Virus record (IMG/VR): IMGVR_UViG_3300028840_006257
Span: 62,001 to 126,000 of that record
Strand: one strand, 5' to 3'
Length of the DNA: 64,000 bases
In this document: positions 481 through 60,198 of the stretch, piece by piece
Layout of the letters: the number at the start of each line of letters is the position of its first letter
How positions within the stretch are numbered: position 1 is the first letter of the stretch
Notes under the pieces: model-generated
What the model saw: the letters and a program-made list of their open reading frames with translations, nothing else
The model's database searches: none
Told to the model about the DNA's origin: nothing
Translations under genes and position numbers: made by a program

Positions 481-500
481 CTATAGCAGATCCTCTGTAG
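481..500 (+). promoter_or_regulatory. Intergenic dyad motif CTAT-N12-GTAG (candidate late promoter/operator), copy 1
   Basis: CTAT 481-484, GTAG 497-500, just after the stop at 475. Same motif recurs in four other short intergenic gaps. Confidence 0.55.
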
Positions 501-554
501 GAGTTCTGCGTCCAGATGCCCTCTAGCTCGACCATCGCGACGAAGGAAGGCGCC

Positions 555-815
555 ATGAGGTTCTTCGACATTGCGCTGAAAGTCCTCTCGATGCTCGTGA
601 TCCCGGTCATCATCTGGGCCGTGAAGCTCGAGGTGAAGAACGCGATCCAGGACGAGAGGATCGTCGAACTTCAGGAGGACCTGGACAAGCTGTCCGACGT
701 GACGAACGTGGTCCAGGCGAACTCCCTCGCGCTGGTCCGGCTCGAGGGAAAGCTCGACAACGTCGACGAGAAGATCAGTGAGGTCAAGACGCTGCTTCGC
801 GACCGCGGTCAGTAG
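555..815 (+). CDS. Single-TM, coiled-coil membrane protein (i-spanin-like or holin-like)
   Basis: ATG 555 after GAAGGAAGG. N-terminal hydrophobic segment IALKVLSMLVIPVIIWAV followed by a heptad-rich coiled coil; 86 aa. Confidence 0.6.
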   Translation: MRFFDIALKVLSMLVIPVIIWAVKLEVKNAIQDERIVELQEDLDKLSDVTNVVQANSLALVRLEGKLDNVDEKISEVKTLLRDRGQ

Positions 816-1326
816 CCTCCTTCTGCTCGCGATTGCCTGCGAGGGCGCCGAACCGAGGGACGCCACGGTCCCGGCTCGCGCGGCGGGCGGGGGCGAGGTC
901 GAGCACAAGGAACCGCCTCCACCTCCGGTGCCCGGAGCTCCGCCGTCCGAGGCTCCCGAGCAGACCGGAGTCGAGGACGATCCTCCGCCCGAAAACGCGG
1001 ATCCTGGCTCGCCGCCGGAGGACGGTGTCTCTAAGACCAAGCGGCCCGAGCGAGGGAGGGACGGCTGCCGCCTGGGCGAGATGCGATTCGAGGGCGAGTG
1101 CTGGTCGAAGAAGTACGTGAAGATGCTGCTCAAGCGGCGCGAGCAGGAGGCCCTGGAGAAGGTCCAGAAGGCGCGGGACGTCGCCGACGCCGCGCAGGGA
1201 GCCCGCGACCTGCTCGAGCAGAAGACGGTCCAGATGGATAAGGTCGAGGACGACCTGGACGAGATCCTCGACGAGTTCAGGCGCCAGCAGGAGGAAGAGA
1301 AGAACAAGAAGGAGGAGGGCCCCTGA
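778..1326 (+). CDS. Predicted lipoprotein, Pro-rich linker plus C-terminal coiled coil (o-spanin-like)
   Basis: Signal peptide MRSRR-FATAVSSLLLLAIA|C21 with a lipobox-like end; PPPPPVP linker; start lies inside the 3' end of the upstream membrane gene. Confidence 0.55.
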   Translation: MRSRRCFATAVSSLLLLAIACEGAEPRDATVPARAAGGGEVEHKEPPPPPVPGAPPSEAPEQTGVEDDPPPENADPGSPPEDGVSKTKRPERGRDGCRLGEMRFEGECWSKKYVKMLLKRREQEALEKVQKARDVADAAQGARDLLEQKTVQMDKVEDDLDEILDEFRRQQEEEKNKKEEGP

Positions 1327-1369
1327 CGGTTTTCACGAAGGGATTTTCGCCGGTCGGTAGAGTTCCGGC

Positions 1370-1738
1370 GTGTCAGAGACCGAGATGAACACCCCACCCG
1401 AGACACCACCAAGCGACGACGGCGCCGCGACGCCGCCCGAGGATCCAGACGTGATCGGCAAGGTCACGCCCGAGGAGCAGGCGGCCATGATGGCGATTCG
1501 CGGCGAGCAGCAGCAGCTCATGCTGAAGATCGGAGAGCAGGAGTTCCTGAAGACGCGCATCCTCGCGCGACTGGACGAGCTCGAGCGCAAGCAGCAGGAG
1601 TTCGTCAACGGAATCTCGCAGCGCCTCGGCATCAAGGAGGGGCAGCAGTGGGTCGCCGTCGCCGACGGGACCATCCGGCTGGTCAAGCGCGGCGAGCCGG
1701 TCCAGACTCAGGAGGGAGCAGGACCACCCTCAGGATAG
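1370..1738 (+). CDS. Hypothetical coiled-coil protein
   Basis: ORF with host-like codon usage; alternative ATG at 1385; central amphipathic helix (QQQLMLKIGEQEFLKTRILARLDELERKQQEF). Confidence 0.65.
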   Translation: MSETEMNTPPETPPSDDGAATPPEDPDVIGKVTPEEQAAMMAIRGEQQQLMLKIGEQEFLKTRILARLDELERKQQEFVNGISQRLGIKEGQQWVAVADGTIRLVKRGEPVQTQEGAGPPSG

Positions 1739-4468
1739 GTGTCCATGACGTGCGTGAACAGCGGCAAGGAACCGTGGGCCAGCAAGGCTAATCCCCTGGA
1801 GCCGGCCTCGTGCGACGACGGTGACACGCCGCCCGACACGCCGCCGTGTCCCGATCCGTCGCCCAGTCCGGGTCCCTTCGGACCGGGCTGCGTGGGTTGG
1901 GAAGTTGGTCCCAACGAGTGCCCGGTTCCGCCGACCAACGTCCAGGTCGTGAGCCCGCTGTTCGCGGGAACCCTCGACGTCCGGTGGGATGATCCCGCGA
2001 TCCTGGCCAAGAACGGCAAGTTCAACGTGGTCGGGGTGAACGTCTACCGGAGCGACTCCTCCGAGCGAGGTCCCTACGCGCGCCTGAACAGGACGCCCGT
2101 CGGGGGCCTGTTCTACCGAGACTTCACGGACAACGTCCTGGTCGAGGACGAGGTGGTCGACTGGGACACGAGCTGGCTCTCGAGGGGGGAACAGTCGAAC
2201 GACCGCAAGTGGGTCTTCAGGACTAGCCGCTACCCCATCGTGAAGAAGTCGGGGCAGGCCATCGCGGCCGACAGCCCGATGGACGTGCGCCTCGTGATCG
2301 ACGGGCAGATCGTTCCGGTCCAGGCCGTGTTCGGACCGACGGGAGAGGTGACGCTCATCAACGTGCGGGGCTACAACTTCGCCACGGAGCGCTGGATCGA
2401 GCCGACCCTGCCGACGGGGCCCGAGACGGCGGTGTCGCTCAGCTACTGCTACAACGCCAACGCGATCCGCACGAGCCTGGACAGGAAGATCTGGTATCGG
2501 GTCACGACGGTCGCCGCCGATCCGAGCTCTCCGACGGGCTTCCGCGAGACGCCGCTCGACTTCGCCGAGCCCGCGACGCACAGGGCGGTCGAGTCCCTAG
2601 ACTACATGTGGCGAGAGGCGATCAGGCGCAACAACTGGGTGCTCGAGCAGGGCGGCGAGCGCGTCAAGATCTTCGTCAAGAAGACCTCGGGCGAGCAGTG
2701 CTTCTGCGGGCGCGACCCGCGGGCCATGGAATACGCGCAGCACCCGAGCGCGCGCTGCGAGACCTGCTTCCCGCTTGGCACCGAGGTCATGATGGGAGAC
2801 TTTACCCGCAAACCCATTGAGGAGGTGCAAGTCGGAGACGAAGTTCTGACCCACGCAGGTAAAGTCCGCCGCGTCTACGAGACGATGAGCCGTCCGGTTC
2901 GAGAGTGCCTCATCGACATCCAAGCGACCCACGGTGTGGGGTTCTCTCCGACCGGGAATCATCCGGTGCTCATTGTCAGACGTGAGGACGCGCGCTGCGT
3001 CAGGAACAAGAGGAGCTTGTGCACGGGGCCGGAGAGCAAAGTCATCTGCACCCGCAAGTCTTGGGCGGATCCTTGCCAACGAGACGTGCAGCAACATGCC
3101 CAGTGGGTGAGGGCTGACGAGGTCCGCGAAGGAGACTATCTCGTGTTCTGCCTGCCGAGCGACGAACTTTTCACGAACGGGATGAGTCGTGACCGGCTGC
3201 GTGTGCTCGGGTACTACGCGGCCGAAGGAAACACGGCCAAGAAGCAGCGCAAGGATGATGGGTCGACGACCCCGGACGACAAGACGACCGTCTTCGGATT
3301 CCACGTTGATGAGATTCCGTCGTTCGTGACCGAGCTTCAAGAATGTTTGCGGGATGAGTACGGGGCCTCCTCTTCTGTTCAGCCGTGCAGCAACACCGAG
3401 AACGGCTGCGCCTTGGTCGTGAGTCGTCAGGCCGTGGCTAAGGACATATTGGCTCACGTTGGGAAGTACAGTGTGGCCAAGCGACTCAGCCGAAATCTCG
3501 CGTGGCAGCGTCCAGAGATGGCGCGCGAGTTCCTGGGCGCCTATTTCAACGGGGATGGCTGGCAGTGTCTGAACGAGTCCAGGACGCACCTTGGAGTGAG
3601 TAGCGCTTCGTACGCCATGGCGCGGCAGGTGGAGGTCATGCTTCTCCGACAAGGAATAGTTCCGAGGTTCGACTCTCGGTATCGCACGGGGGTTGCGAAT
3701 CCGGGCCGTCCGGGCACGCACGAGACGACGGAGCACACGGTGGCTGTTCGCAAGACAGACATGCACGTGCTTGCCAGTACGATGCAGAAGATGACCGACG
3801 TGCCTTCGGAGAGGCGCCGAGGAGGATGGGCTGTCAGTGCAGGTCGTCTCGTTCTCTATCCCGTCCGCAGCGTTCGTCACATCCCGTACGAGGGCTCCGT
3901 CTACAATCTTGAAGTCGAGGAGGACCATTCCTACGTGGCCAACGGGGCGGTTGCCCACAACTGTTTTGGAACGGGTTTTATCGGTGGGTTTGAAGGGCCC
4001 TACGACGCCATCGTCGCCCCCGACGACGCCGACCGTGCCGTGCGCCAGACGCCGAACGGGCGCTACCTCGAACACATGCAGGACGTGTGGACGGGCCCGA
4101 GCCCGATGCTCACGCAGAGAGACTTCATCGTCAAGCAGACGAACGAGCGCTACAGCATCGGTCCCGTGCGGAAGCCGAGCAACCGGGGCAACGTCCTCCA
4201 GCAGCACTTCCAGATCCGGTACCTCGACGAGCAGGACATCCGGTACAGGGTGCCCCTGTTCGACACCACCGAGCTGTGCTGGCCCGAGACCCGCGAGCGT
4301 CCGGCCGTCCTGCAGCGGGGCGCGTGGGAGACGGAGTATCCGCCCGAGGGTCCGCACCCCGTGGGCGCCGACTACCAGCAGACTCCGATGGAGACCGAGA
4401 AGGAGAACGTCCCTGACGAGCGCGAGCAGAGAGGCCGGACGCCGGTCTGGTCCAACATATCGTACTGA
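1739..4468 (+). CDS. Neck/head-closure-like virion protein with N-terminal FN3-like domain and Zn-finger, interrupted by an intein (spliced product ~510 aa)
   Basis: FN3-like PPTNVQV...LDVRWDDP...GVNVYRS. After splicing the extein reads CFC...RCETCFGTGFIGGF (CxxCxGxG) then WTGPSPMLTQRDFIV...ERYSI. Sits at the start of the tail gene block; the neck assignment is by context. Confidence 0.6.
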   Translation: MSMTCVNSGKEPWASKANPLEPASCDDGDTPPDTPPCPDPSPSPGPFGPGCVGWEVGPNECPVPPTNVQVVSPLFAGTLDVRWDDPAILAKNGKFNVVGVNVYRSDSSERGPYARLNRTPVGGLFYRDFTDNVLVEDEVVDWDTSWLSRGEQSNDRKWVFRTSRYPIVKKSGQAIAADSPMDVRLVIDGQIVPVQAVFGPTGEVTLINVRGYNFATERWIEPTLPTGPETAVSLSYCYNANAIRTSLDRKIWYRVTTVAADPSSPTGFRETPLDFAEPATHRAVESLDYMWREAIRRNNWVLEQGGERVKIFVKKTSGEQCFCGRDPRAMEYAQHPSARCETCFPLGTEVMMGDFTRKPIEEVQVGDEVLTHAGKVRRVYETMSRPVRECLIDIQATHGVGFSPTGNHPVLIVRREDARCVRNKRSLCTGPESKVICTRKSWADPCQRDVQQHAQWVRADEVREGDYLVFCLPSDELFTNGMSRDRLRVLGYYAAEGNTAKKQRKDDGSTTPDDKTTVFGFHVDEIPSFVTELQECLRDEYGASSSVQPCSNTENGCALVVSRQAVAKDILAHVGKYSVAKRLSRNLAWQRPEMAREFLGAYFNGDGWQCLNESRTHLGVSSASYAMARQVEVMLLRQGIVPRFDSRYRTGVANPGRPGTHETTEHTVAVRKTDMHVLASTMQKMTDVPSERRRGGWAVSAGRLVLYPVRSVRHIPYEGSVYNLEVEEDHSYVANGAVAHNCFGTGFIGGFEGPYDAIVAPDDADRAVRQTPNGRYLEHMQDVWTGPSPMLTQRDFIVKQTNERYSIGPVRKPSNRGNVLQQHFQIRYLDEQDIRYRVPLFDTTELCWPETRERPAVLQRGAWETEYPPEGPHPVGADYQQTPMETEKENVPDEREQRGRTPVWSNISY
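2765..3961 (+). mobile_element. Intein (399 aa) with LAGLIDADG homing endonuclease
   Basis: Block A CFPLGTEVMMGD at 2765; block B PTGNHPVL; LAGLIDADG helices LGYYAAEG (3206-3229) and FLGAYFNGDG (3530-3559); block F/G VYNLEVEEDHSYVANGAVAHN ending 3961, then +1 Cys (TGT). Codon usage is more AT-rich than the exteins. Confidence 0.95.
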
Positions 4469-4484
4469 TCCGAGGACCTGATCG

Positions 4485-5018
4485 ATGCTCGGGATCAAGA
4501 TCAGGACGACGCGCGGCAAGACCTGGACGAACGTCGCGTCGGAGGACTTCATCACGCGGAAGTTCCTGCAGAAGGTCGGCAGGCTCTTCGTGAAGTCCAT
4601 CGTGTACGAGGCCCGCAAGGACTTCGCCAAGCAGGGGGGCTCGCGGACGCCGACGGGACAACCCGAGGGGATTCCGGCCGACGAGGCTTTCTACAAGTCG
4701 TTCAAGTTCAGGACCACGGAGAAGACCGTCGAGATCTACTGCTCGTGGCCCCAGATCGAGCAGATCACCGAGGGCAGGCGCCCGTACCCGATGGACTGGC
4801 TCACGCAGCAGGCCGGGATCTCCCGCGTGCCCATGAAGGGCCCGGGCGGTACAGTGCTGATCAAGACTACCCCCGCCAGCTCCGAGGACGCCTGGATCCA
4901 TCCGGGCTTCCGCAAGAACAACTTCCTTCGTCGGGGGTATGAGCGGGCACGGCGCGAGATGGACACGATGCTCCAGCAGCAGATAGTCGAGACCCTGAAG
5001 AAGCTGCCCCTTGCATGA
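4485..5018 (+). CDS. Putative neck/tail-completion protein (HK97 gp10-like)
   Basis: 177 aa basic protein with C-terminal IHPGF...FLRRGYERARREM pattern typical of this class; neck-region context. Confidence 0.45.
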   Translation: MLGIKIRTTRGKTWTNVASEDFITRKFLQKVGRLFVKSIVYEARKDFAKQGGSRTPTGQPEGIPADEAFYKSFKFRTTEKTVEIYCSWPQIEQITEGRRPYPMDWLTQQAGISRVPMKGPGGTVLIKTTPASSEDAWIHPGFRKNNFLRRGYERARREMDTMLQQQIVETLKKLPLA

Positions 5019-5719: not shown

Positions 5720-5723
5720 GACG

Positions 5724-6731: not shown

Positions 6732-7779
6732 GTCCGACGGCCTGTCGCTCTGGACGGGGACGAGGACCGACCTGTCGTGCGTCCCCGAGCGGCTCGAGGA
6801 GTACCAGCCCGTCGTCAGCTTCAGCGGCGGCAAGGACTCGGTCGCGACCACCCTCGCGCTGCGAGAGCACGAGATCGAGGCGCGGCACGTCTTCGCCGAC
6901 ACGGGCTGGGAGTCCGAGCAGACCACCGACTACGTCCGGGAGATCGGCCAGAAGCTCGGCATCCCGATAGAGGTCGTCGAGACGACGCCGCCCGAGCTCG
7001 AGCCGTGGGTCGAGGAGCTCGTCGCCGAGGCCGAGAAGCGCCTCGGTCGAAGGTTCGGCGCGCTCCCGAGGGGGATGCTGCACCGGGGAGGGACGCCGCT
7101 GAGGATCGGCCGGTGGTGCACCATCGAGTACAAGCTGCGCCCTATCAAGGCGTACCACGAACGCGTGAGCGACGAGACGGGACTAGACGTGGTCAACGTC
7201 GTGGGCGTCCGGGCCGAGGAGAGCCTGTCTAGGGCCCGGAGGGAGACGTGGTACCTCGACCGGCAGTGGGACGGCTACATGTGGCTGCCCATCCACCACT
7301 GGCGCACGGACGACGTCCTCCGCATCCACCAGAGGCACGGCATTCCCGTCAATCCCCTCTACAGGAAGGGCCACGACCGCGTCGGCTGCTACCCGTGCAT
7401 CCTCGCGCGGAAGGACGAGATCCGCCTCATCGCTCAGCTTGAGCCCGGGCGCATCGAGATGGTGCGCGAGCTCGAGCAGCTGTTCGAGAAGATCAGGACG
7501 CGCCGTAACAGGGAGCGGCCTGGGCGCTACGGCAAGGAGGATCCCGGTTTCTTCGAGGCCGTGATCGAGCGCGGCAACTCCACGGTCCCCGCGAAGATCG
7601 ACGACGTGGTGGACTGGGCGCGTACGGGACACGGCCGCAGGGTGAGGCTCACCGAGGTCCCGCCGGGCGGCGGCTGCTTCCGGTGGGGACTGTGCGAGAC
7701 GGTGGAGAGGCCCGACGATTCCGACCGGGAGTCCATCGCTGCCGTCCTGAACGAGGCCCTGGGCACCTCGAGCGAATGA
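6724..7779 (+). CDS. PAPS-reductase family (PP-loop, Fe-S) protein
   Basis: PP-loop VSFSGGKDS, VFADTGWE, RWCTIEYK, VVGVRAEES, RVGCYPCI, C-terminal GCFRWGLCE. Start overlaps the actin-like gene stop. Confidence 0.85.
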   Translation: MSRSDGLSLWTGTRTDLSCVPERLEEYQPVVSFSGGKDSVATTLALREHEIEARHVFADTGWESEQTTDYVREIGQKLGIPIEVVETTPPELEPWVEELVAEAEKRLGRRFGALPRGMLHRGGTPLRIGRWCTIEYKLRPIKAYHERVSDETGLDVVNVVGVRAEESLSRARRETWYLDRQWDGYMWLPIHHWRTDDVLRIHQRHGIPVNPLYRKGHDRVGCYPCILARKDEIRLIAQLEPGRIEMVRELEQLFEKIRTRRNRERPGRYGKEDPGFFEAVIERGNSTVPAKIDDVVDWARTGHGRRVRLTEVPPGGGCFRWGLCETVERPDDSDRESIAAVLNEALGTSSE

Positions 7780-7784
7780 TTCTC

Positions 7785-7805
7785 CTATCGGGCGCCCCTC
7801 GGTAG
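7785..7805 (+). promoter_or_regulatory. Dyad motif CTAT-N13-GTAG, copy 2
   Basis: CCTAT CGGGCGCCCCTCG GTAG in the 30-nt gap between stop 7779 and TTG 7810. Confidence 0.55.
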
Positions 7806-7809
7806 GATC

Positions 7810-8289: not shown

Positions 8290-9533
8290 CGGGTCAGCTC
8301 CAGCGCAAGTTCATCCACGAGCTTCGGCGCTACTGGCGGTACCACCCCAAGTACTCGGACATCGTCGAGCACATTCAGGGGAAGTACTCGCACCGGGAGC
8401 GGCCGCAGTACGGCATCGTCCTGAAGAACAGTTCGGGCAACCAGGTTCAGCTGGCGGCGGACAACTTCCAGGGGTACGTCCACTCCTACGTCTACCTGGC
8501 GCACGTGGAGGGGAGACCGAACCTGTCCGTGGAGTGGGTGCGCGAGGACATGATCGCCATCCAGGACAACGGCGGCATGTTCCCGTCGCCTCCCGGCATC
8601 TACTACCTCGACTTCTGCGACGCGAACGGGAACCCCACGGACGAGACGTTCTACGTCGACCCGCTCCTCGACGTGATCGACGAGACCGTCCTCAAGATCA
8701 ACGACACCCAGTACCAGCTCGAGGAGGGCAAGTTCCTCGCCGGAACGCTCAGACTCTACCGGATGCCGGGCAACATCAGGCTCTACGACGGCACGAACTA
8801 CACGGCCGTCCCGGAGACGGGTGTCGTCACGCTGATCGACACCCTGACCGACGACGAGTTCCTCTCGGCCGACTACCGCTGTCCCGCCGAGAGCACGGGA
8901 CCATGGGTCGTGCGGGAGGAGTACGCCCTGCGCGAGCCCATCCCGGGCTGCGTCCTGGCCTTCGGACGCCGCGTCACTCCCGGCGACCGGCTCGCCGTGG
9001 TCGTCCAGCAGAGGCGCACCATCGCCGCCCTCGAGTACGGGGGGCGCTGGGACCTCTCGCTCGACGTGGACGTCATCGCCCGGGACCCGGACTCGCAACG
9101 TGAAATTCTCGATCAGACCTCCCTGTACCTCTGGTCTACGGCGCGGCCGAGGCTCTCGAGCCAGGGCATCGAGATCTCGGCCGTGACCATGGGAGGCGAG
9201 ACCGAGGAGACCTACGATGACGTGGCGGACGACTGGTTCTACAATGCCAGCTTCAGCATCCAGGTCCAGACCGACTGGATGATCCACGTTCCGCTCGGCA
9301 TCTGCATCCGGGCCATCGAGCCCGGCAGCGGGGAGGCCATCGTGCCCGGAACTGCTCCCCTCGTGGCCCCGTTCGTCGAGCAGATCGCGGGCCTAACGGA
9401 CGAGCAGATCGCCCAGATCCAGGCCAACTTCCGCAAGATGGCCGACCTCGGATTGCGGGCTCCATGGGATCCGTGGTTCGTGGGCAAGGAGGGCCACCCG
9501 GGCGTCTACGGCACGGGTCCGATGCTCCGTTAA
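8274..9533 (+). CDS. Tail terminator/tail-completion-like protein with an inserted beta domain
   Basis: 419 aa. C-terminal RWDLSLDVDVIARD...ILDQTSLYLW...FYNASFSIQVQTDW pattern fits a gpU/gp15-like alpha/beta fold; lies just upstream of the sheath gene. Confidence 0.5.
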   Translation: MYYFLTGQLQRKFIHELRRYWRYHPKYSDIVEHIQGKYSHRERPQYGIVLKNSSGNQVQLAADNFQGYVHSYVYLAHVEGRPNLSVEWVREDMIAIQDNGGMFPSPPGIYYLDFCDANGNPTDETFYVDPLLDVIDETVLKINDTQYQLEEGKFLAGTLRLYRMPGNIRLYDGTNYTAVPETGVVTLIDTLTDDEFLSADYRCPAESTGPWVVREEYALREPIPGCVLAFGRRVTPGDRLAVVVQQRRTIAALEYGGRWDLSLDVDVIARDPDSQREILDQTSLYLWSTARPRLSSQGIEISAVTMGGETEETYDDVADDWFYNASFSIQVQTDWMIHVPLGICIRAIEPGSGEAIVPGTAPLVAPFVEQIAGLTDEQIAQIQANFRKMADLGLRAPWDPWFVGKEGHPGVYGTGPMLR

Positions 9534-9538
9534 TGGGC

Positions 9539-9558
9539 CTATGTAGGTCCCGATATAG
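9539..9558 (+). promoter_or_regulatory. Dyad motif CTAT-N12-ATAG, copy 3
   Basis: CCTAT GTAGGTCCCGAT ATAG in the gap between stop 9533 and TTG 9574. Confidence 0.55.
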
Positions 9559-9573
9559 ACGGAGCACGCGCGC

Positions 9574-17965: not shown

Positions 17966-17974
17966 TCTAAGCGG

Positions 17975-18002
17975 TTGCGGCAGTCCTACCGGGTGGTAGG
18001 AT
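17975..18002 (+). promoter_or_regulatory. Possible sigma70-type promoter (TTGCGG-N16-TAGGAT, extended -10 TG) overlapping hairpin TCCTACC-GGGT-GGTAGGA
   Basis: -10 ends at 18002 and the GTG start is at 18009 with no RBS, which fits a leaderless transcript. 7-bp perfect inverted repeat at 17984-18001. Confidence 0.35.
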
Positions 18003-18008
18003 TGGCAC

Positions 18009-20606: not shown

Positions 20607-20659
20607 ATCTCTCCGCTTTTCCCCCTATCGGGCCCCCTCGGCATCAGGAGGGCACTGTC

Positions 20660-21055: not shown

Positions 21056-21258
21056 GCGATTTTCACGAACGGCTCTCCGAATTCATGAACGTGTCGCCGA
21101 CCGAGCTCGCGCGTCGGCTCAGAAGAGAGGATGACCCCGAGAAGCGCCGAGCGATGCGCCGGGCCCTCGAGGCATGGCGGCTGACGGAGGGGAATCCCCT
21201 GACCCGGAGTGCCTCGCGCGTCGCCCGCACGTGGCTGGCTTCGTTTCTACGTTTATAG
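21052..21258 (+). CDS. Small basic hypothetical protein (68 aa) ending SASRVARTWLASF
   Basis: GTGA overlap with the speD stop; alternative ATG at 21085. Confidence 0.55.
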   Translation: MSDFHERLSEFMNVSPTELARRLRREDDPEKRRAMRRALEAWRLTEGNPLTRSASRVARTWLASFLRL

Positions 21259-21333
21259 GCGGTCGATCTACAGGAGGGGACCGTCCTGTCCCCATTTTGA
21301 GCGGTGTAAGCCGCCTGACGAGAGGAAGGCAAC

Positions 21334-22125: not shown

Positions 22126-22233
22126 CCCTGAGACTTCGCGGGTAGGGTGAGGGAAAGCGCCCTTCCCGCACGGTGCCTCTCGGCCCCAGGGTTGGGAGGT
22201 CTTAGTGCTAACCGAGCAATCGGTGGAGCGTCG

Positions 22234-22352: not shown

Positions 22353-22408
22353 CTCTTGCGCTGTGAAAACGACCCACCGGCTTGCTCCACGACAGAGTGG
22401 AGAGAGTC

Positions 22409-38453: not shown

Positions 38454-38457
38454 CTGC

Positions 38458-39048: not shown

Positions 39049-39055
39049 AGGACTC

Positions 39056-53028: not shown

Positions 53029-53981
53029 TGCCCTTCAACTTTCTCGGGACGATGAGAGAGACCCAGTGGCGGTTCTTCCGCAACTGGGTGCTGAACGAGC
53101 GCCGCAGCGTCTCTCCGCGCCTCAAGGTGATTAACGCCGAGCTTCGTCGCATCGGACGCATCACTGTCTTCTACCGACGCAGGACGGAGACGGTAAACAC
53201 GCCCGACGGCGCCGTGCGGGAGCTCGAGACGGTGACGGAGGAGCGCGAAGCCTTCTTCGTCTCGCCTGGGTCATCTCTCGAGAAGCTCGTTCAGGCCTAC
53301 GTCGCGGCCGGGGGCAATCCCATGTCCATCTCCCTGTGGTTGCAGCCCGACCAGGTTCAGTTCACGACGGAGAACGATCCCACGGCCGACGCGAAGGACG
53401 ACCCGAACGAGAAGACGACGGAGAAGGGGTTTCAGAGCACGCCCTTCGACCAGCCGTACGGCGGGGTCGTGGCCCCTCGAAGCGCGGACTCGTACGGGCC
53501 GGGCGGACGCTACGTGGGAGGACTGCCGACCTTCATCCGAGACGTGCCCACGCAGATGGGACGCGATGCTGCCCAGGCGGACGAGACGGCGAAGATTGCG
53601 ATCAGGGTCGACCACGCTCGCAGGTGGGTGAGGCAGGAGATCGCCACGATCCAGGCCCTCGAGGCCCGGATCATGAAGTTGATGGATCTGCGCGAGCAGC
53701 TTATGGACGAGCGAGAGATGGTCATCCAGCAGGCCGTCGGCGGCTCCGTCGAAGACTTCCCGTTCGCTCCCGACCCCGACAGGTTCGCCCGAAACCTGCA
53801 CCTGACGAAGATTCAGGAAATCGACAGCGCTTTTTACAAAAGAAACGAGGACGGGAGCCTCGACTTCAACACCATCAACGTCGGTGACACGTCGGATCCG
53901 CACAACGTCGTCGTGGCGGGCATCTCCGGGGAGCCGGGCCTCCTTCGGAATCCCAGGGGGGCCGATCCCTTCGCGGAGTGA
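53028..53981 (+). CDS. Hypothetical baseplate-region protein
   Basis: 317 aa, TGATG stop-start overlap. Confidence 0.7.
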   Translation: MPFNFLGTMRETQWRFFRNWVLNERRSVSPRLKVINAELRRIGRITVFYRRRTETVNTPDGAVRELETVTEEREAFFVSPGSSLEKLVQAYVAAGGNPMSISLWLQPDQVQFTTENDPTADAKDDPNEKTTEKGFQSTPFDQPYGGVVAPRSADSYGPGGRYVGGLPTFIRDVPTQMGRDAAQADETAKIAIRVDHARRWVRQEIATIQALEARIMKLMDLREQLMDEREMVIQQAVGGSVEDFPFAPDPDRFARNLHLTKIQEIDSAFYKRNEDGSLDFNTINVGDTSDPHNVVVAGISGEPGLLRNPRGADPFAE

Positions 53982-53986
53982 TTCGC

Positions 53987-54007
53987 CTATAGAAGACCCC
54001 GAGGTAG
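53987..54007 (+). promoter_or_regulatory. Dyad motif CTAT-N13-GTAG, copy 4
   Basis: CCTAT AGAAGACCCCGAG GTAG between stop 53981 and ATG 54011. Confidence 0.55.
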
Positions 54008-54010
54008 ACC

Positions 54011-55183: not shown

Positions 55184-55192
55184 GAGTCAACG

Positions 55193-58100
55193 ATGGTAGC
55201 CACTCCAAAAGTCATCGGCCCCGACGGCGTGGCGCGCGAGACCACCATTTTCTCGACCACCATGTCCTCCAGGTTTTTCCAGGGGACCATCGACTCCGAC
55301 ACGGTGGACATGCAGATCTCGGTTCGCGGAGGCGCCTTCACCTCCGATCCCGACCTCATTGTGTTCGAGGGTGATACTTTCGCGTTTCCCAACACGACGG
55401 TGTTCCCCGAGGGCCTCGAGCTGGTGGCGGGGCTCAACGTGATCGAGGTGCGCTCCATCTCGTTCTCCGGGGCCGTCTCGGCGTCCGCCGTCGTCCAGGT
55501 CACCCTCGTCCAGGAGGCGGATGTCGGCCTGATCGGCACGACGCCGACCGACATCAGTATCGAGCAGCGCGAGGACGAGGTCGAGATCCGCATCGAGGGC
55601 GTCTCGGACGCCACCTTTCGTGGCTGCAACTTCTACGCCTCCCGCTTCGAGGGAGGCGGCGCCACGGGTTTCCAGCGTATCAACGTCAACACGATCACGG
55701 ACTCGGAGACGGTGTTTGAGACGAGCACCCTGGCGACCATCGAGTCGGACAACGCGGTCGCCACGAATCCTGATGGTACCCCCGCGGCCGATCCCCTCTA
55801 CGTGAAGACGAGGCAGACTCAGACGAGCAGCCCGGACGTCATCGAGGACCTCGAGGACATCACGCTGACCCCGGAGCTCGCCGCCGCAATCACGGAGCAG
55901 GAGCAGGAGAACCTCCTCAAGACCGACTTCGTCGAGGTCACGGAGGTCCCCGAGACCGCCACGGTTCTCCGGACGACCGTCACGGTCGACTTGGTCGTCG
56001 AGCGTTCGTTCTACACCTTCCGGCATAACCGGCAGTTCGGTCCCTCGAACGATCCGCCGACGATTCCGGTCGGCGAGTTCGCTAGCGCGCCAATCACGGA
56101 GTCCCTGTACTACGTCGCGACAGCCGTGTTCTTCGACTCTGATCGGCAGGTCGAGATCGAGTCCCCCTTCTCGGCCGAGGTCGTCGGCAAGCCGGTCCTG
56201 ATCGAGCAGAACGTGGGCACCTTCCCGGCTCCGGCTCGTCTTCAGATCGTAGAGGACACGATCTCCTCGCTCTCCCGGACCACCCCGCAGCTCGCGGTCC
56301 AACCCGGGGCCGTCATCCGGGACACTTTCGTGGATCCGTTCTCGAACGAGGTGACGCGGCTTCGGCTGCTCGTCGACTTCATGTACCGGGTCCAGTCGTT
56401 CGACACGCTGCTCCAGGTCGACGGGATCGAGCCCGACGGAACCTCCACCCCGGTCCTGCGTTCCCCGTACAAGCAGGCCCTTGCCCGCGTGTTCGAGATC
56501 AGCAATCCGAACGACGTCCAGACTATCGTGGACACCGCGTTCGAGCAGCTCGCCTCGCGCGACAACGTGTTCCGCAGCGCCGGCATCCGGGCGCGCGGCT
56601 TCGTCACGTTCTTCACGCGCACGACGCCGACCTCGACCATCTACATCCCGCTCGGAACCCGCGTCGCCAGCGGCACCGTGCAGTTCGTCACGACGACGGA
56701 CGCCTCGATTCCCATCAGCAACGTGGGGGCGTTCTTCAACCCGACGACCGGGCTCTACCAGATCGACGTACCCGTCGAGGCCGAGCAGCCGGGTGCGGCG
56801 AGCATCCTCGGGGCGGGCCAGATTCGCACCATAGTGAGCGCCCTGCCGGGCCTCTCGGTCACGAACCAGAACGCGACGTTCGGCGGCACGGATCAGGAGA
56901 CGAACCTCCGGCTGTCCGTCAGGGCGCGCAATGCCCTGGCCTCCGTGGACAGCGGCACGGAGCGCGGAATTCTCCAGACGGCGGCCGACGTGGCCGGCGT
57001 CCAGGACGTGCGCGTGGTGGCGGGCGGCGACTCGCTCATGCAGCGAGACTTCGATACCGACTACGACAAGCACACTGGAGGGAAGGTGGACGTGTGGGCG
57101 CGTGGGGAGTCTCTCGGCACCGTCACGGACACCTTCGCCTTCTCGTTCGAGGTGGCGAACGACGTCCAGTTCCAGATCATCGGCAACCCGCTGAGCTACA
57201 CGTTCCGTGCCCTCGACCCGAACCTCTCCGAGAGCAACCCCATCGCGGAGATGCTCGACGACGAGACGCTGGGCCTGGGACTGCGCAACGCGTCGAGCGG
57301 GATCTTCTTCGACCTCACCGACGTGCAGGTCGTCGACTACCGGACGGTCCAGCTTTCGACGGACGTAGTCCAGCCGACGGTCACCTTCGGGGATATCGTC
57401 CTGGGGGACTACAGGTACGTCACCTCCACGAGGTTTGTCTTCACACGCCAGCCCGTGGACTCCGTCGTCAGCGTGACCGGAGAGATCTCCGGGGAGCTCC
57501 CCGAGGACAACTACAGCTTCGTGCGTCCCGACGATCCGCTCCTCGACGGGCGCTCCACGAGGGCGCAGGCGTACCTCGACATCGTGCAGGTCGACGGGAT
57601 CCCAAGCGGAGAGTTGGTGTCCGTGACGAGCGAGCAGCACATCCTGCTCGGCCAGTACAACGAGTTTTTGCACAGTCTCGGCGCCAACCCCCTGACCGTG
57701 CAGGTGTTCAACTCGACCGGGACCGTCCAGTTCAAGGGACCTGAGGACCCGAGCGGCCAACCCGACTACGTGATCGTGCCCGGATCGCAGACGGTGGCTC
57801 TGGCCATCCGAAGGACCTTGAACAGCCAGATCAGGAGCGGCGAGACGGTCCTCGTCGACTACGAGCACGCCGAGAACTTCACGGTCGAGTACCAGTCGAA
57901 CTTCGTGATCCCCACCGTCCAGGACGCCCTGGACGCCCGCAAGCACGCGACCGCGGACGAGCTCGCGAAGGCCTCGATCCCGGTTCCGGTCGACCTCACG
58001 GCGACGATAGTCACGCGATCTGGCTCCCGCGTCTCCACGGTAGACAGCAACGTGAGGACCAACCTGACGGCCTTCCTGCGCGCCGTGCCGCAGGGCGGCG

Positions 58101-58741
58101 CCGTCCGGGAGTCGGACATCATCGCAGTGATTGACAACACGCGAGGCGTCTCCTTCGTGGAGAACCCGCTGACGAAACAGGCGCGTTCCGAGGGGGCGCT
58201 CGTCGTGCGCGAGAGCGTCCCGTCCACAACCGGCGAGGTGGAGATGCTCCTCGGCACGAGCGACGTGCCCTACTCGACCACCACCGTCAAGACGTGGCTG
58301 CTCGAGAATGAACTCGAGAATCCCACGTCGCAGGGAGGCGGCGACGGCACGCAGTTCGCGGGCGTCTTCAAGGACGACGTCCTTATGTCGCTGCTCACCT
58401 CTAACCCTACGGCCCTCAAGAACAGGGCCGACCAGGCGTTCCTCATCGGGAACGACGGACTCGTGATCCCGGGTTTCAGCGACGACGCCACGATCCAGGC
58501 AAACTACCCGGCCGCCAACACGCCCGAGGAGATCGAGGACGTACGTCAGCAGATCACGGGAAACCGCGTGCTGGTCTCGCTCGCGGCCGACGACCGGCCG
58601 CAGCTCCACTCGTTCACGGCGACCTACGCCGTGGCGTTCGTGGAGACCCGCGTGCAGGACCTCGAGGCGAGCAGCCTTGAGTTCTTCTCCGTGGGCAACT
58701 TCATTTTCACCTTCGCGGAGGACGTGCGCGATGTCGTGTAA
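55193..58741 (+). CDS. Baseplate J-like (gp6) wedge protein with extra domains
   Basis: GIRARGFVTF...IPLGTRVASG...VPVEAEQPG...GAGQI...VTNQNATFGGTDQETNLRLSVRA baseplate-J motifs; 1182 aa. Confidence 0.85.
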   Translation: MVATPKVIGPDGVARETTIFSTTMSSRFFQGTIDSDTVDMQISVRGGAFTSDPDLIVFEGDTFAFPNTTVFPEGLELVAGLNVIEVRSISFSGAVSASAVVQVTLVQEADVGLIGTTPTDISIEQREDEVEIRIEGVSDATFRGCNFYASRFEGGGATGFQRINVNTITDSETVFETSTLATIESDNAVATNPDGTPAADPLYVKTRQTQTSSPDVIEDLEDITLTPELAAAITEQEQENLLKTDFVEVTEVPETATVLRTTVTVDLVVERSFYTFRHNRQFGPSNDPPTIPVGEFASAPITESLYYVATAVFFDSDRQVEIESPFSAEVVGKPVLIEQNVGTFPAPARLQIVEDTISSLSRTTPQLAVQPGAVIRDTFVDPFSNEVTRLRLLVDFMYRVQSFDTLLQVDGIEPDGTSTPVLRSPYKQALARVFEISNPNDVQTIVDTAFEQLASRDNVFRSAGIRARGFVTFFTRTTPTSTIYIPLGTRVASGTVQFVTTTDASIPISNVGAFFNPTTGLYQIDVPVEAEQPGAASILGAGQIRTIVSALPGLSVTNQNATFGGTDQETNLRLSVRARNALASVDSGTERGILQTAADVAGVQDVRVVAGGDSLMQRDFDTDYDKHTGGKVDVWARGESLGTVTDTFAFSFEVANDVQFQIIGNPLSYTFRALDPNLSESNPIAEMLDDETLGLGLRNASSGIFFDLTDVQVVDYRTVQLSTDVVQPTVTFGDIVLGDYRYVTSTRFVFTRQPVDSVVSVTGEISGELPEDNYSFVRPDDPLLDGRSTRAQAYLDIVQVDGIPSGELVSVTSEQHILLGQYNEFLHSLGANPLTVQVFNSTGTVQFKGPEDPSGQPDYVIVPGSQTVALAIRRTLNSQIRSGETVLVDYEHAENFTVEYQSNFVIPTVQDALDARKHATADELAKASIPVPVDLTATIVTRSGSRVSTVDSNVRTNLTAFLRAVPQGGAVRESDIIAVIDNTRGVSFVENPLTKQARSEGALVVRESVPSTTGEVEMLLGTSDVPYSTTTVKTWLLENELENPTSQGGGDGTQFAGVFKDDVLMSLLTSNPTALKNRADQAFLIGNDGLVIPGFSDDATIQANYPAANTPEEIEDVRQQITGNRVLVSLAADDRPQLHSFTATYAVAFVETRVQDLEASSLEFFSVGNFIFTFAEDVRDVV

Positions 58742-60164
58742 AGACGACCCTCTCGTCTTCCCGAAAGACCCGTACCTCCCGTTCACTCGGGACCAGAACC
58801 CGGCCCCGGTTTCCCAGACGGGACAGCAGGCCATCAGGACCCTCCGCGACATCGTGGACTCCATCCTGCGGACTTTCCAGCAGGTGCTCCCCTCGAACTA
58901 CGTCGCGGAGATCCCCGGTCCGTACTACGTCCTCCAGTTCCAAGCGGCCGCGGAGGAGCTCGCCAAGATCCAGCTCGCTCTTGAGGAGATCGGCCTCGAG
59001 TCGGACGTGGACTTCGCCCGGCCCGAGTACCTCTGGCAGATGATCGGGACCCTGGTGTTCCCGGACACCACGAAGGCGCCGGTGGGCATCCCCGAGGTGG
59101 ACGGCGACCTCACCTACCGGGAGTTCCTGCGTCGGATGATCCTCCTGCTCCTCCAGGGGGCGACGCTCAAGGTGCAGGAGCAGGGGCTGGAGCTGCTTAC
59201 CCAGGCCGTGATCGACGTCATCGCGAAGGTGGACTGGAGCGACCGGGAGATCTCGGCGTGGGGCTTCGGCGAGCAGCACGAGTTCGAGATCAACGTCCTG
59301 TGTCGGACGATCTTCACGGACCCGACGACCGGGGAACTCATCGAGGGCGCGCTGGGCACCGGCTTCCCGCCCGATCCCTTCGTCGCGCTGCGGAACAACC
59401 TGCGCATCTTGAGGGCCCTCAAGCCGGGCAAGGCTCTCTTCGAGTACCGGCACCTCTTCCTCGACGCCTTCGGGGACCTGTTCACGGCCGAACCTTTCAT
59501 CCAGCTTGACCCCTGGTACTACGAGGACTTCCGCAAGTTCTGCTGCGGCATGAAGGAGGTCTCGGGAGACGAGGGGGAGACCCTCGCCTCTCGCATGCTG
59601 TTCTCCGACGTGACCCGCGACTTCAGCTCCGTCTGTTCGGGCGCGAACCTCGAGGTCCTCGACGGCCCGAACAGCAAGCCGACCAGCGGGGGCGACGACT
59701 TCGCGACGCTCGGGTTCTACCGGGTCGTGGGGGTCCGGCGCCTGATCACCGAGCTCGAGACGGACGAGGACGGCGAGGTCGTCCCCGACATCCAGGAGTA
59801 CACGACGAGCCCGACCGGGCTCTCGGGCACGCTCGCGATCCTGAACGACGACGGCGATCTTGAAGATACGAACCAGGATTTTTCCGATGCCGTCGAGGGC
59901 GAGGTTCTCACGATCCTCGGAGGGACGAACGCTGGCGATTACCGGCTTGGCACCCTTTTGGGAAACTCGGGAGGGCCGGTCGGGAAGGTGCCTCCCGGCT
60001 CTGGAGTCACGCGAGTGCGTGTCGCGCCTAGCATTCTCCAGATCCTCACTCGGATGCCTCGACAGGCCACAGGACAGGCCTACCGAGTCTCCATCGAACG
60101 ACTCGGAACACGCACGCCCTTCACCGTCCTGGGGGAGGACGCGTCCGCTCAGTTCTACATCTAG
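58731..60164 (+). CDS. Baseplate wedge protein (gpI/gp7-like)
   Basis: ARPEYLWQMIG...YREFLRRMILLLLQGAT...RALKPG pattern; ATG 58731 overlaps the baseplate-J end; 477 aa. Confidence 0.6.
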   Translation: MSCKDDPLVFPKDPYLPFTRDQNPAPVSQTGQQAIRTLRDIVDSILRTFQQVLPSNYVAEIPGPYYVLQFQAAAEELAKIQLALEEIGLESDVDFARPEYLWQMIGTLVFPDTTKAPVGIPEVDGDLTYREFLRRMILLLLQGATLKVQEQGLELLTQAVIDVIAKVDWSDREISAWGFGEQHEFEINVLCRTIFTDPTTGELIEGALGTGFPPDPFVALRNNLRILRALKPGKALFEYRHLFLDAFGDLFTAEPFIQLDPWYYEDFRKFCCGMKEVSGDEGETLASRMLFSDVTRDFSSVCSGANLEVLDGPNSKPTSGGDDFATLGFYRVVGVRRLITELETDEDGEVVPDIQEYTTSPTGLSGTLAILNDDGDLEDTNQDFSDAVEGEVLTILGGTNAGDYRLGTLLGNSGGPVGKVPPGSGVTRVRVAPSILQILTRMPRQATGQAYRVSIERLGTRTPFTVLGEDASAQFYI

Positions 60165-60177
60165 CTCGGTGGCGGGC

Positions 60178-60198
60178 CTATAAGGGCATCAAGGATAG
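60178..60198 (+). promoter_or_regulatory. Dyad motif CTAT-N13-ATAG, copy 5
   Basis: CCTAT AAGGGCATCAAGG ATAG between stop 60164 and ATG 60229. Confidence 0.55.

What the first reader, a model, noticed from the sequence alone, without database searches (positions are those of the whole stretch)
481..60198. Recurrent intergenic dyad CTAT-N12/13-RTAG: candidate phage late promoter or operator
Seen: five full copies (481-500, 7785-7805, 9539-9558, 53987-54007, 60178-60198), each in a short gap just after a stop codon and 3-30 nt before the next possible start (54 nt before the likelier ATG 555 for copy 1). Two partial copies are at 20625-20644 (CCTATCGGGCCCCCTCGGCAT, nearly identical to copy 2) and 21253-21273, before the tube gene. 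The half-sites are inverted complements and AT-rich for this genome, and they do not resemble sigma70 -35/-10. Inference: a recognition site for a phage-encoded sigma factor, RNA polymerase or dimeric regulator, or an RNA stem for translational control. Starts only 3-4 nt downstream at 7810 and 54011 suggest leaderless messages.
Basis: seen in the sequence. Interest (0 to 1): 0.65.

Follow-up and report, generated by a model that had tools for sequence, protein, structure and literature searches.

The report
Huge-phage promoter-like intergenic motif
The repeated "dyad" is real, but it is one part of a longer, one-directional signal (CGGTAG, 5 bases, CTATAG, about 11 bases, GTAG) that sits in front of genes across a clade of uncultivated 200-620 kb phages and is most likely their own promoter type, not a symmetric operator or an RNA hairpin.

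Summary
All five full copies and both partial copies are at the stated coordinates. They are far above chance: 5 observed in the window's 3.2 kb of intergenic DNA against 0.04 expected.

The window is part of a 213-kb fragment of a roughly 500-600-kb phage. The motif is kept at the same gene junctions in relatives whose proteins are only 50-79% identical.

The conserved unit is asymmetric and has three parts:
- C-G-G/T-T at -11..-8, often overlapping the upstream stop codon as CGGTAG.
- CTAT(A)G at 0..5.
- A C-rich spacer of fixed length followed by (G)GTAG at +17/18.

The first two boxes are conserved across 53 relatives (GC 37-68%). One 297-kb relative carries 43 copies on one strand.

There is no consistent RNA stem and no covariation. 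Copies run with the genes and sit at the head of gene blocks after strand switches. A Shine-Dalgarno or start codon follows the last box within 0-18 nt.

Best reading (about 0.6): a phage-specific promoter class whose RNA start lies at or just before the GTAG box. A conserved sigma-H-like factor encoded by relatives may read it. The transcription start is unmapped, because no RNA data exist.

The parts
470..503 (+). Copy 1. CGATAG 470-475 (TAG is the stop of the upstream ORF), CTATAG 481-486, GTAG 497-500 followed by GAG. The next gene starts at ATG 516.
   Evidence: 28 bits. The orthologous junction in G001 keeps TAGCGCCTCTATAG and ..CAGGAG.
7774..7805 (+). Copy 2. Stop TGA 7777-7779 sits in the upstream-box position, then CTATCG 7785-7790, C-rich spacer, GGTAG 7801-7805.
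   Evidence: 23.5 bits. This is the only window copy with a good hairpin (z -2.3).
9528..9558 (+). Copy 3. CGTTAA 9528-9533 (TAA is the stop), CTATGT 9539-9544, ATAG 9555-9558, then GACGGAG (Shine-Dalgarno) and TTG 9574 (zinc-ribbon gene).
   Evidence: Both boxes and the spacing are kept in L011, L012, L013 and G001 while the spacer sequence changes. Zn_ribbon_8 hit.
20614..20644 (+). Partial copy. CGCTTT 20614-20619, CTATCG 20625-20630. The third box is degenerate (CAT 20642-20644), then CAGGAGG and ATG 20660 (AdoMet decarboxylase).
   Evidence: (15.9 bits). The G001 counterpart is at 148222.
21242..21274 (+). Most deeply conserved copy. CGTTTC 21242-21247, TTATAG 21253-21258 (its TAG is the stop of a small conserved ORF, about 21085-21258), CTACAGG 21268-21274. 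It lies upstream of the 263-aa virion protein gene (21334).
   Evidence: Across 53 non-identical relatives: C-11 in 45/53, G-10 in 42/53, T-8 in 50/53, A+4 in 48/53. Position 0 and TAT at +1..+3 (45/53 and 53/53) were fixed by the anchoring and are not a test.
21276..21299 (+). Stem-loop GGGGAC/GTCCCC (21276-21293) plus ATTTTG, directly after the copy at 21253. Either a 5'-proximal RNA hairpin or a weak terminator/attenuator.
   Evidence: It is kept in 11 relatives with an invariant CCAyTTTGCGCGGT. Covariation is weak (2 of 5 pairs).
53976..54007 (+). Copy 4. Stop TGA 53979-53981, CTATAG 53987-53992, GGTAG 54003-54007, then ACC and ATG 54011 (baseplate wedge-like gene).
   Evidence: GCCTATAG and GTAGACC-ATG are kept in L014, L016/17 and L018/G001 with unrelated spacers. 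L015 keeps only the CCTATA box.
60167..60198 (+). Copy 5. CGGTGG 60167-60172, CTATAA 60178-60183, GATAG 60194-60198. GAGGAA Shine-Dalgarno and ATG 60229 follow.
   Evidence: CTCGGTGGCGGGCCTATAG...GGATAGAAC is kept in L014, L016, L018 and G001.

Best explanation
The copies are instances of a phage-specific promoter class used by a clade of huge, uncultivated, contractile-tailed phages.

The recognised DNA is a directional unit of about 32 bp:
- an upstream box C-G-G/T-T(-A-G) at -11..-6 relative to the C of CTAT;
- five weakly constrained bases;
- the core box CTAT(A)G;
- a C-rich spacer of fixed length;
- a (G)GTAG box at +15..+19.

Inference: RNA synthesis starts between the CTATAG box and the end of the GTAG box. 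The messages would then begin directly with a Shine-Dalgarno sequence or within a few bases of the start codon, giving minimal or no leader.

Inference: the motif is read either by host core polymerase carrying a phage factor, or by a polymerase not yet recognised. Two candidates are conserved in the clade: a sigma-H-like sigma factor, and a small protein with a sigma region-4 helix-turn-helix.

Because the motif contains stop triplets it cannot easily lie inside genes. The phage therefore packs the upstream gene's stop codon into the first box and places the next gene right after the last box.

Shown: motif anatomy, enrichment, orientation, conservation, position at heads of gene blocks, absence of a conserved RNA stem, and the existence of the sigma-like gene in relatives. 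Inferred: promoter function, the position of the start site, the identity of the reading factor, and the timing class.
For: 1. Enrichment and orientation.
- CTAT-N11-13-GTAG in G000+G001: 13 intergenic sense, 3 intergenic antisense, 9 in 730 kb of coding DNA.
- CGKT-N7-CTAT in G001: 25 intergenic sense against 2 for the reversed control.
- Position-matrix scan at 18 bits or more: G000 11 against 0, G001 21 against 1.

2. Purifying selection. The boxes and their spacing are kept at orthologous junctions between genomes with 50-79% protein identity, while the spacer sequences differ.

3. Clade-wide conservation.
- Upstream of the conserved 263-aa virion gene in 53 relatives, C-11 G-10 T-8 and A at +4 are kept; the CTAT core was the anchor, so it does not count as a test.
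- In AT-richer relatives the core box reads CTATAAT or CTATAAA, like a -10 element.
- G009 (297 kb) has 43 copies forward against 4 reverse, with controls of 4 and 4.

4. Position where transcription must begin.
- In G009, copies head the + strand gene blocks after strand switches at 38773, 60315, 120018, 188172, 223952, 235532 and 248637.
- In G001, copies head leftward units at 313778, 591844 (a 26-gene run with only a 56-nt divergent gap) and 608867.
- Strong hairpins immediately precede some G009 copies.
- In the distant cultured relative Tunturi_5, a terminator is followed by TTATAG before the orthologous gene.

5. The downstream signals abut the motif. The distance from the TAG to the first in-frame start is bimodal: 3-7 nt in 16 of 47 sites, and 11-18 nt in 17 of 47. 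In the sites of the second group read by eye, GGAG or GAGG follows the TAG directly.

6. No canonical sigma70 promoters lie in window 1-20000 beyond chance (2 against 1.0), and none are at the copies.

7. A conserved sigma70-family factor exists in relatives G001, G007, G009 and G006. Its profile matches the PDB sigma-H factor 3mzy at E 9e-9. A region-4 HTH protein is 50-55% identical across the clade and is directly followed by a motif copy in both G001 and G009.
Against: - No transcript 5' ends are available. Only DNA runs hold this sequence.
- The box spacing fits no characterised sigma70-family geometry. The upstream box lies only 5 nt from the core box, and nothing is conserved at a -35 distance.
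- The window's own 213-kb fragment lacks the sigma-like gene, although the fragment is only about 40% complete.
- In G001 only 3 of 53 gene runs are headed by the motif, so it is one promoter class among several at best.
- The tight packing next to stop and start codons, and the (G/A)TAGGAG form of the last box, would equally suit an RNA-level signal such as the start-associated sequences of cluster K mycobacteriophages.
Confidence: 0.6

Rival explanations
1. RNA-level signal inside polycistronic messages. The unit would be recognised on the mRNA, either as a binding site for a translational regulator or enhancer, or as a cleavage site that separates cistrons. It would act on the ribosome-binding site that follows it, in the manner proposed for the start-associated sequences (SAS/ESAS) of cluster K mycobacteriophages.
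For: - The motif begins at the upstream stop codon and ends 0-18 nt from the next start.
- The last box often reads (G/A)TAGGAG, close to the SAS core ATAGGAG, and is one-directional like SAS.
- In G009 a purine-rich GG..AGGA element sits at a fixed distance from CTAT.
Against: - Copies stand at the head of gene blocks in divergent regions where no upstream co-directional transcript is expected. One such gap is only 56 nt.
- The most conserved boxes (CGGT, CTATA) lie 25-45 nt from the start codon, while the box next to the start is the least conserved.
- There is no conserved RNA structure.
- In low-GC relatives the core box drifts to TATAAT-like sequences.
Confidence: 0.17
2. Stoperator-like sites. 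These would be asymmetric DNA sites for a phage regulator that blocks or modulates elongating polymerase in short intergenic gaps, as the L5 immunity repressor does, rather than sites where transcription starts.
For: - Many copies are spread along the genome in short gaps at stop codons.
- Orientation strictly follows the direction of transcription.
- A conserved small HTH protein exists in the clade.
Against: - The unit is about 32 bp with three boxes, not a 13-mer.
- The copies are tied to the following ribosome-binding site at a fixed distance.
- In G009 30 of 38 intergenic copies do not use the upstream gene's stop codon.
- No integrase or immunity module was looked for or seen.
- The core box resembles a -10 element in AT-rich relatives.
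Confidence: 0.1
3. RNA hairpin formed by the CTAT and RTAG arms, acting as a translational operator, an RNase III-type site or a stabiliser.
For: Some copies fold well, including copy 2 and G001 277507, 27765 and 608867. Three of 30 have z below -2.
Against: - Mean z is -0.52.
- Orthologous copies do not keep a stem.
- In a 12-site alignment 71.9% of cells pair against 71.3% in shuffles, and the covariation score is 0.110 against 0.122. Only the invariant C-G, U-A, A-U and U.G pairs hold.
- There is no Rfam match.
Confidence: 0.03

Closest known systems
T7-group single-subunit RNA polymerase promoters (T7, SP6, K11). The consensus is recalled from general knowledge.
   Same: The core CTATA followed mostly by G is identical to positions -5..-1/+1 of T7 and SP6 promoters. 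The conserved span upstream of the virion gene is 17 nt and ends abruptly after CTATA. Both are compact, directional, and placed just before genes.
   Different: The middle of the 17-nt span is barely conserved. There is an extra downstream GTAG box. No T7-like polymerase gene was detected in G000 or in the 92%-complete G001, although that search had no positive control. The start site is unknown.
Sigma54 -24/-12 promoters (TGGCAC-N5-TTGCW, from general knowledge)
   Same: The geometry is the same: a hexamer with GG at positions 2-3, five bases, then a pentamer. Counting 12 nt from the second box puts the start at the GGTAG box, which fits the requirement that the RNA begin at or before it.
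   Different: The second box has no GC (it is CTATA). No sigma54 DNA-binding domain and no sigma54-activator ATPase was found in five genomes of the clade.
T4-type late promoters (TATAAATA read by gp55, from general knowledge)
   Same: An AT-rich TATA-type box with no -35 element, placed directly before late structural genes in tightly packed arrays. Some relatives read CTATAAA or CTATAAT.
   Different: There is a conserved CGGT(AG) box 7 nt upstream and a GTAG box downstream. The last positions of the would-be -10 hexamer are not conserved. Genes for gp55, gp33 and the clamp were not searched.
Start-associated sequences and extended SAS of cluster K mycobacteriophages (PMC3203893; function still untested in PMC12699233)
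   Same: An asymmetric, one-directional repeat within a few bases of start codons, sometimes containing the upstream stop codon. The core ATAGGAG resembles (G/A)TAGGAG here. A second conserved element lies upstream. No support for an RNA hairpin was found in either case.
   Different: The 13-mer GGGATAGGAGCCC is not present as such. The upstream element here is CGGTAG-N5-CTATAG, not 17-bp inverted repeats. The copies lie in structural modules, whereas SAS are restricted to the non-structural arm. The phages are unrelated.
Stoperators of cluster A mycobacteriophages (L5 repressor sites; PMC9283540)
   Same: Many asymmetric sites in short intergenic spaces near stop codons, with orientation tied to the direction of transcription.
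   Different: Those are 13-mers bound by a monomeric immunity repressor of temperate phages. Here the unit is three boxes over 32 bp at a fixed distance from the next ribosome-binding site, and no repressor is known.

Membership tests
Sigma70-type -35/-10 promoter | -35-like hexamer 16-18 nt upstream of a -10-like hexamer | tested here: not met
   The consensus scan finds no match at any copy. The conservation profile shows nothing at a -35 distance from CTATA. The only upstream box lies 5-7 nt away.
Sigma70-type -35/-10 promoter | -10 hexamer TAnnnT with a conserved final T, and the start 5-9 nt downstream | tested here: inconclusive
   TATA is invariant but positions 5-6 are free. If the GTAG box were the -10 element, 16 of 47 downstream starts would lie upstream of the RNA start. 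No start-site data exist.
T7-like single-subunit RNAP promoter | Contiguous conserved block of about 17-23 bp ending at the start site with CTATA | tested here: inconclusive
   The 17-nt span ending in CTATA is seen, but only its two ends are conserved. The start site is not mapped.
T7-like single-subunit RNAP promoter | Cognate T7-like polymerase gene in the phage | tested here: inconclusive
   PF00940 gave no candidate in G000 or G001, but the search rang in no control genome. The giant orphan ORFs have no Pfam, PHROG or PDB matches.
Sigma54 -24/-12 promoter | GG at -24 and GC at -12, spaced by one helical turn | tested here: not met
   The GG and the spacing are present, but the second box is CTATA without GC.
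Sigma54 -24/-12 promoter | Sigma54 and an enhancer-binding ATPase are available | tested here: not met
   PF04552 and PF00158 are absent from five clade genomes. The host genome is unknown.
Cluster K SAS/ESAS | 13-bp GGGATAGGAGCCC (2 mismatches or fewer) 3-7 bp upstream of start codons | tested here: not met
   Only the core (G/A)TAGGAG recurs. Distances to the start are 0-18 nt or more, and many copies lack GGAG.
Cluster K SAS/ESAS | Upstream 17-bp imperfect inverted repeats with a variable spacer | tested here: not met
   The upstream element is CGGTAG-N5-CTATAG at fixed spacing.
L5-type stoperator | Asymmetric sites in short intergenic gaps, oriented with transcription | tested here: met
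L5-type stoperator | Bound by the phage immunity repressor and halts elongation | not testable with these tools
   This needs binding and transcription assays. No repressor was identified.
Structured RNA element (hairpin operator or processing site) | Base pairing kept by compensatory changes | tested here: not met
   No Rfam family matched.

The most novel reading that the evidence does not exclude
The three-box unit is the promoter of a transcription system not yet described. One version has the clade's divergent sigma-H-like factor (or its region-4 HTH partner) directing host polymerase to a -24/-12-like layout (CGGTAG-N5-CTATA). The other has a polymerase hidden among the 1,800-3,700-aa orphan proteins. 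Either way the system would start RNA exactly at the GGTAG box, so that dozens of structural-gene messages are leaderless or begin with their Shine-Dalgarno sequence.
Probability: 0.2. Interest if true: 0.7.

Novelty: new member of a known kind. Interest (0 to 1): 0.5.

Why it matters
Huge phages of 200-700 kb are known almost only from metagenomes, and nothing is known about how they time their gene expression.

A clade-wide, easily scanned signal (CGGTAG-N5-CTATAG) gives four things:
- a first map of probable transcription units;
- a handle for sorting genes into temporal classes;
- a candidate pairing between a DNA element and a conserved phage sigma-like factor that can be tested in vitro;
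- a help for calling gene starts in these genomes, including leaderless or minimal-leader genes.

If the layout proves to be read by a sigma70-family factor at a sigma54-like spacing, that would be unusual for bacterial transcription. If it is an ordinary phage promoter, the result is useful annotation but not surprising.

Tried and rejected
- RNA evidence. The run search found only DNA metagenomes from sediment and seawater and no RNA run, so read laying was not used and no start site could be mapped.
- Near-identity search against GenBank phages: no match.
- Pfam, PHROGs and PDB sequence searches of the giant ORFs (3,673, 2,482, 1,803, 2,044 aa and others): nothing informative.
- A DxDGD motif conserved in the 1,803-aa protein was seen but not pursued. 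It lies in the tail module and need not be a polymerase.
- Multisubunit polymerase families PF00623 and PF00562: absent.
- Sigma70 region 2 in the window's own record: absent.
- GTAG box as a sigma70 -10 element: rejected, because Shine-Dalgarno or start codons follow within 0-7 nt at many sites.
- Three TAGs as stops in all three frames: rejected, because the N12 and N13 spacings and the CTATCG/CTATGG variants do not keep it.
- RNA hairpin: rejected.
- Sigma54 membership: rejected on sequence and on gene content.
- Composite motif in the distant cultured relative Tunturi_5: not enriched (1 against 1), so the motif is specific to the clade.
- G006 (485 kb) shows no enrichment for the exact CGKT-N7-CTAT pattern.
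- My gene calls come from a simple codon-bias script. Some starts are approximate and small genes are missed.

Full report
**Context**

The window is bases 62,001-126,000 of a single 213,010-bp IMG/VR virus record (G000). The record is 65% GC, linear, and estimated about 40% complete. Almost all genes in the window lie on the + strand.

The recognisable genes are a spike OB-fold protein (35988-38453), a baseplate wedge/sheath-initiator-like protein (54011-55183) and Baseplate_J (55193-58741). The window therefore covers the tail and baseplate module of a contractile-tailed phage. Several giant ORFs (3,673, 2,482 and 1,803 aa) match nothing in Pfam, PHROGs or the PDB.

Relatives exist only as metagenomic contigs:
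- G001: 618,736 bp, 92% complete, 58% GC, syntenic with G000 over about 150 kb at 50-79% protein identity.
- G007: 435 kb, complete.
- G006: 485 kb.
- G009: 297 kb.

The nearest GenBank records are an uncultured 485-kb phage (LR745208.1) and, distantly, Tunturiibacter (Acidobacteriota) phage Tunturi_5.

**Observation check**

Whole-window shuffles expect 0.29 matches against 7 found on both strands. Shuffling only the window's 22 intergenic segments (3,220 nt) expects 0.043, and 0 of 1000 shuffles reach the observed 5. Intergenic AT-richness therefore does not explain the copies.

In G000 plus G001 the asymmetric form CTAT-N11-13-GTAG occurs 13 times in intergenic DNA in the sense orientation, 3 times antisense, and 9 times in 730 kb of coding DNA. 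CTAT start positions peak sharply 5 nt after stop codons.

**What the motif really is**

Aligning 26-30 sites from G000 and G001 shows an asymmetric unit. Positions are counted from the C of CTAT:

| Position | Base | Frequency |
|---|---|---|
| -11 | C | 20/26 |
| -10 | G | 19/26 |
| -8 | T | 24/26 |
| 0..3 | CTAT | all (used as the anchor) |
| +5 | G | 18/26 |
| +17 or +18 | TAG | 20/26 (range 14-19) |
| base before TAG | G | 17/26 |

The spacer between CTAT and TAG is C-rich, and an A or G follows the TAG.

The T at -8 is very often the first base of the upstream gene's stop codon (CGGTAG, CGGTGA, CGGTAA). In those cases the last sense codon is CGG. Where the stop lies further upstream, the same positions read CGGTTTTC. 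The upstream box is therefore part of the signal and not a by-product of stop codons.

G009 confirms this. CGKT-N7-CTAT occurs 43 times forward against 4 reverse, with reversed-pattern controls of 4 and 4. Thirty-eight of these copies are intergenic. Their logo reads CGGTAG..cgcCTAT...cc..c...GG..Agga. Only 8 of the 38 use the upstream gene's stop codon.

The more strongly conserved partner of CTAT is the upstream CGGT box.

**Conservation**

At the orthologous junctions of copies 1, 3, 4 and 5, the boxes and their spacing are kept in genomes with 50-79% protein identity, while the spacer sequences are unrelated. The same holds at G000 41260, 130116, 142937 and 206776.

The partial copy at 21253 lies upstream of a 263-aa virion protein gene that has 286 relatives in IMG/VR. 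In 53 non-identical relatives (GC 37-68%), anchored on [C/T]TATA, the upstream profile is T-12 35/53, C-11 45/53, G-10 42/53 and T-8 50/53, with A+4 at 48/53. Information content then drops to zero at +5. My anchoring rule favoured T-rich or GGT-containing upstream sequence, but it did not fix positions.

In AT-richer relatives the core reads CTATAAT, CTATAAA or CTATAAG. The downstream TAG box is weaker across the wide clade. In G009 it takes the form GG..AGGAG.

**RNA stem**

Thirty sites folded as RNA give a mean z of -0.52 against dinucleotide shuffles, and only 3 have z below -2. On a gap-free alignment of 12 sites, the dyad structure pairs 71.9% of cells against 71.3% in shuffles. The covariation score is 0.110 against 0.122. 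Only the invariant C-G, U-A and A-U pairs and a U.G pair hold, and the inner pairs are mostly broken. Rfam has no match in the window. The RNA-stem reading is not supported.

**Where the RNA must begin**

I measured the distance from the T of the TAG box to the first in-frame start of the next gene for 47 intergenic sites scoring 15.5 bits or more. The distribution is bimodal:
- 3-7 nt in 16 sites, for example GGTAG-ATG, GTAGG-ATG and GTAGACC-ATG.
- 11-18 nt in 17 sites. In those I read by eye, GGAG, GAGG or AGGA follows the TAG directly, at a normal 5-9 nt from the start.

The start at 54011 is confirmed by conservation of MSFDFQL with synonymous differences.

If the next gene is expressed from this signal, the RNA 5' end must lie at or upstream of the TAG box. 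That box therefore cannot be a sigma70-type -10 element. This step is inference.

Three geometries would satisfy it:
- a start about 7 nt after a -10-like TATAGN;
- a start directly after CTATA, as in T7-group promoters;
- a start about 12 nt after the second box, as in -24/-12 promoters, which lands on the GG of GGTAG.

I cannot choose among them.

**Why a promoter rather than an RNA or elongation signal**

- In G009 the motif stands at the head of + strand gene blocks that follow strand switches (38773, 60315, 120018, 188172, 223952, 235532, 248637). One of these blocks has 39 genes. The minus-strand blocks carry almost none.
- In G001 it heads three leftward runs. One run has 26 genes, and its whole divergent gap is only 56 nt.
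- Strong hairpins directly precede some G009 copies.
- In Tunturi_5 a clear terminator is followed by TTATAG before the orthologous gene.
- Canonical sigma70 promoter matches in window 1-20000 are at chance level and none lie at the copies.
- In G001 the motif is found at 12-345 kb and 518-609 kb. It is absent from 437-474 kb, where a different and clearly sigma70-like class occurs (TTGAC, 16-18 nt, CATAGT or CATACT, then ATG 7 nt later). This suggests separate temporal classes.

Each of these points is indirect. Together they favour initiation over read-through signals.

**Who reads it**

No T7-like or multisubunit polymerase family was detected in G000 or G001. The PF00940 search had no ringing control, so it proves little.

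G001 481076-482236 encodes a protein whose C-terminal roughly 190 residues are conserved in G007, G009 and G006 at 36-43% identity. A profile of the four proteins matches the solved sigma-H factor 3mzy at E 9e-9 over nearly its whole length. Single-sequence Pfam hits to Sigma70_r2 and Sigma70_ECF are weak.

A 184-aa protein with an N-terminal Sigma70_r4 domain (E 2e-13) is 50-55% identical across the clade. It is immediately followed by a motif copy in both G001 (277507) and G009 (272375). Its neighbour in G001 has faint NusG/KOW similarity.

Neither gene lies in the window's own fragment. Linking either protein to the motif is inference.

Sigma54 and its activators are absent from five clade genomes.

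**Comparison with known systems**

The core CTATA(G) equals positions -5..+1 of T7 and SP6 promoters, and the 17-nt conserved span is of the same size. However, the middle of the span is unconstrained and no such polymerase is seen.

The hexamer-N5-pentamer layout with GG at hexamer positions 2-3 mirrors sigma54 promoters, but the GC of the -12 box is missing.

T4 late promoters share the lone TATA-type box before late genes, but not the flanking boxes.

The start-associated sequences of cluster K mycobacteriophages resemble the last box in sequence and in position (GGGATAGGAGCCC, 3-7 bp before starts, one orientation, sometimes including the upstream stop, function still untested). They fail on the 13-mer, on the upstream inverted repeats, and on genome region.

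L5 stoperators share the location and the orientation rule, but not the size or the link to the next ribosome-binding site.

I therefore file the motif under phage-specific promoters as a new member whose geometry is unresolved. I do not file it under any of these named families.

**Verdict**

Promoter function is the best-supported mechanism at about 0.6. An RNA-level start-associated signal stands at about 0.17 and a stoperator-like site at about 0.1.

Noticed in passing
G001 (L040-L042), about 437-474 kb: About 25 near-identical promoter-like units: TTGACnnCTATCACAyCGGnCCCCATAGTA or CATACTA, followed 5-6 nt later by ATG. This is a sigma70-type -35/-10 layout that would give leaderless messages. 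It also fits CTAT-N12-ATAG. It is probably the early class of the relative and is not present in the window's fragment.
   Followed up: partly
window 13-22, 1330-1339, 21060-21069 (and elsewhere in G000): The 10-mer TTTTCACGAA and its complement TTCGTGAAAA recur, often directly after stop codons and sometimes as CGGTTTTCACGAA. With one mismatch or fewer there are 16 intergenic against 24 coding hits in G000, about 6-fold enriched per base. It may be a second promoter or regulator site that shares the CGGTTTTC start with the main motif.
   Followed up: partly
window 10081-10516 and 22126-22396: Two long non-coding regions share a core (CTCCCTCGGGAGrCGGTCAGAyG ... GCTCCAC). One lies before the 2,482-aa gene and the other after the 263-aa gene. 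Both are conserved in G001. There is no Rfam match. They may be structured RNAs or long leaders.
   Followed up: partly
window 21276-21305: A stem-loop GGGGAC/GTCCCC followed by CCAyTTTGCGCGGT, which is invariant in 11 relatives, lies directly after the motif copy before the conserved virion gene. It is either a 5' hairpin of the message or an attenuator. Covariation is weak.
   Followed up: partly
window about 21085-21258: A small conserved ORF (about 57 aa, MNVSPTELARRL...) ends in the TAG of the TTATAG box. It is conserved in G001 and L012.
   Followed up: no
window 10517-17965, 30573-35984, 39056-50077: Giant ORFs of 2,482, 1,803 and 3,673 aa have no Pfam, PHROG or PDB sequence match, yet are 62-76% identical to G001 counterparts. 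The 1,803-aa protein has a conserved YQDVDGDLVFKPPFW segment.
   Followed up: partly
window 18009-20606 and 20660-21055: An 865-aa ORF combines a ROS/MucR zinc-finger region, an HTH and a methyltransferase-like domain. The next gene is an S-adenosylmethionine decarboxylase, which is absent at this place in G001.
   Followed up: no
L001 (G000 59-17,030): GGGGTATAAG boxes stand 5-20 nt before several gene starts in the first 17 kb of the record. This looks like a further, -10-like promoter class.
   Followed up: no
L005:12041-12831 (G000 132,041-132,831): A 790-nt insertion with a zinc-finger ORF, absent from G001, is followed by a motif-like unit (CGGTATTCCGTCTTT...TAGaATG) before the next large gene. 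It looks like a free-standing mobile gene that brings or requires its own signal.
   Followed up: no
G001 276.4-280.6 kb (L032) and G009 271.8-272.4 kb (L143): A conserved region-4 HTH protein gene lies next to a gene with faint NusG/KOW similarity in G001. In both genomes it is directly followed by a motif copy. This may be a transcription-regulation module of the clade.
   Followed up: partly
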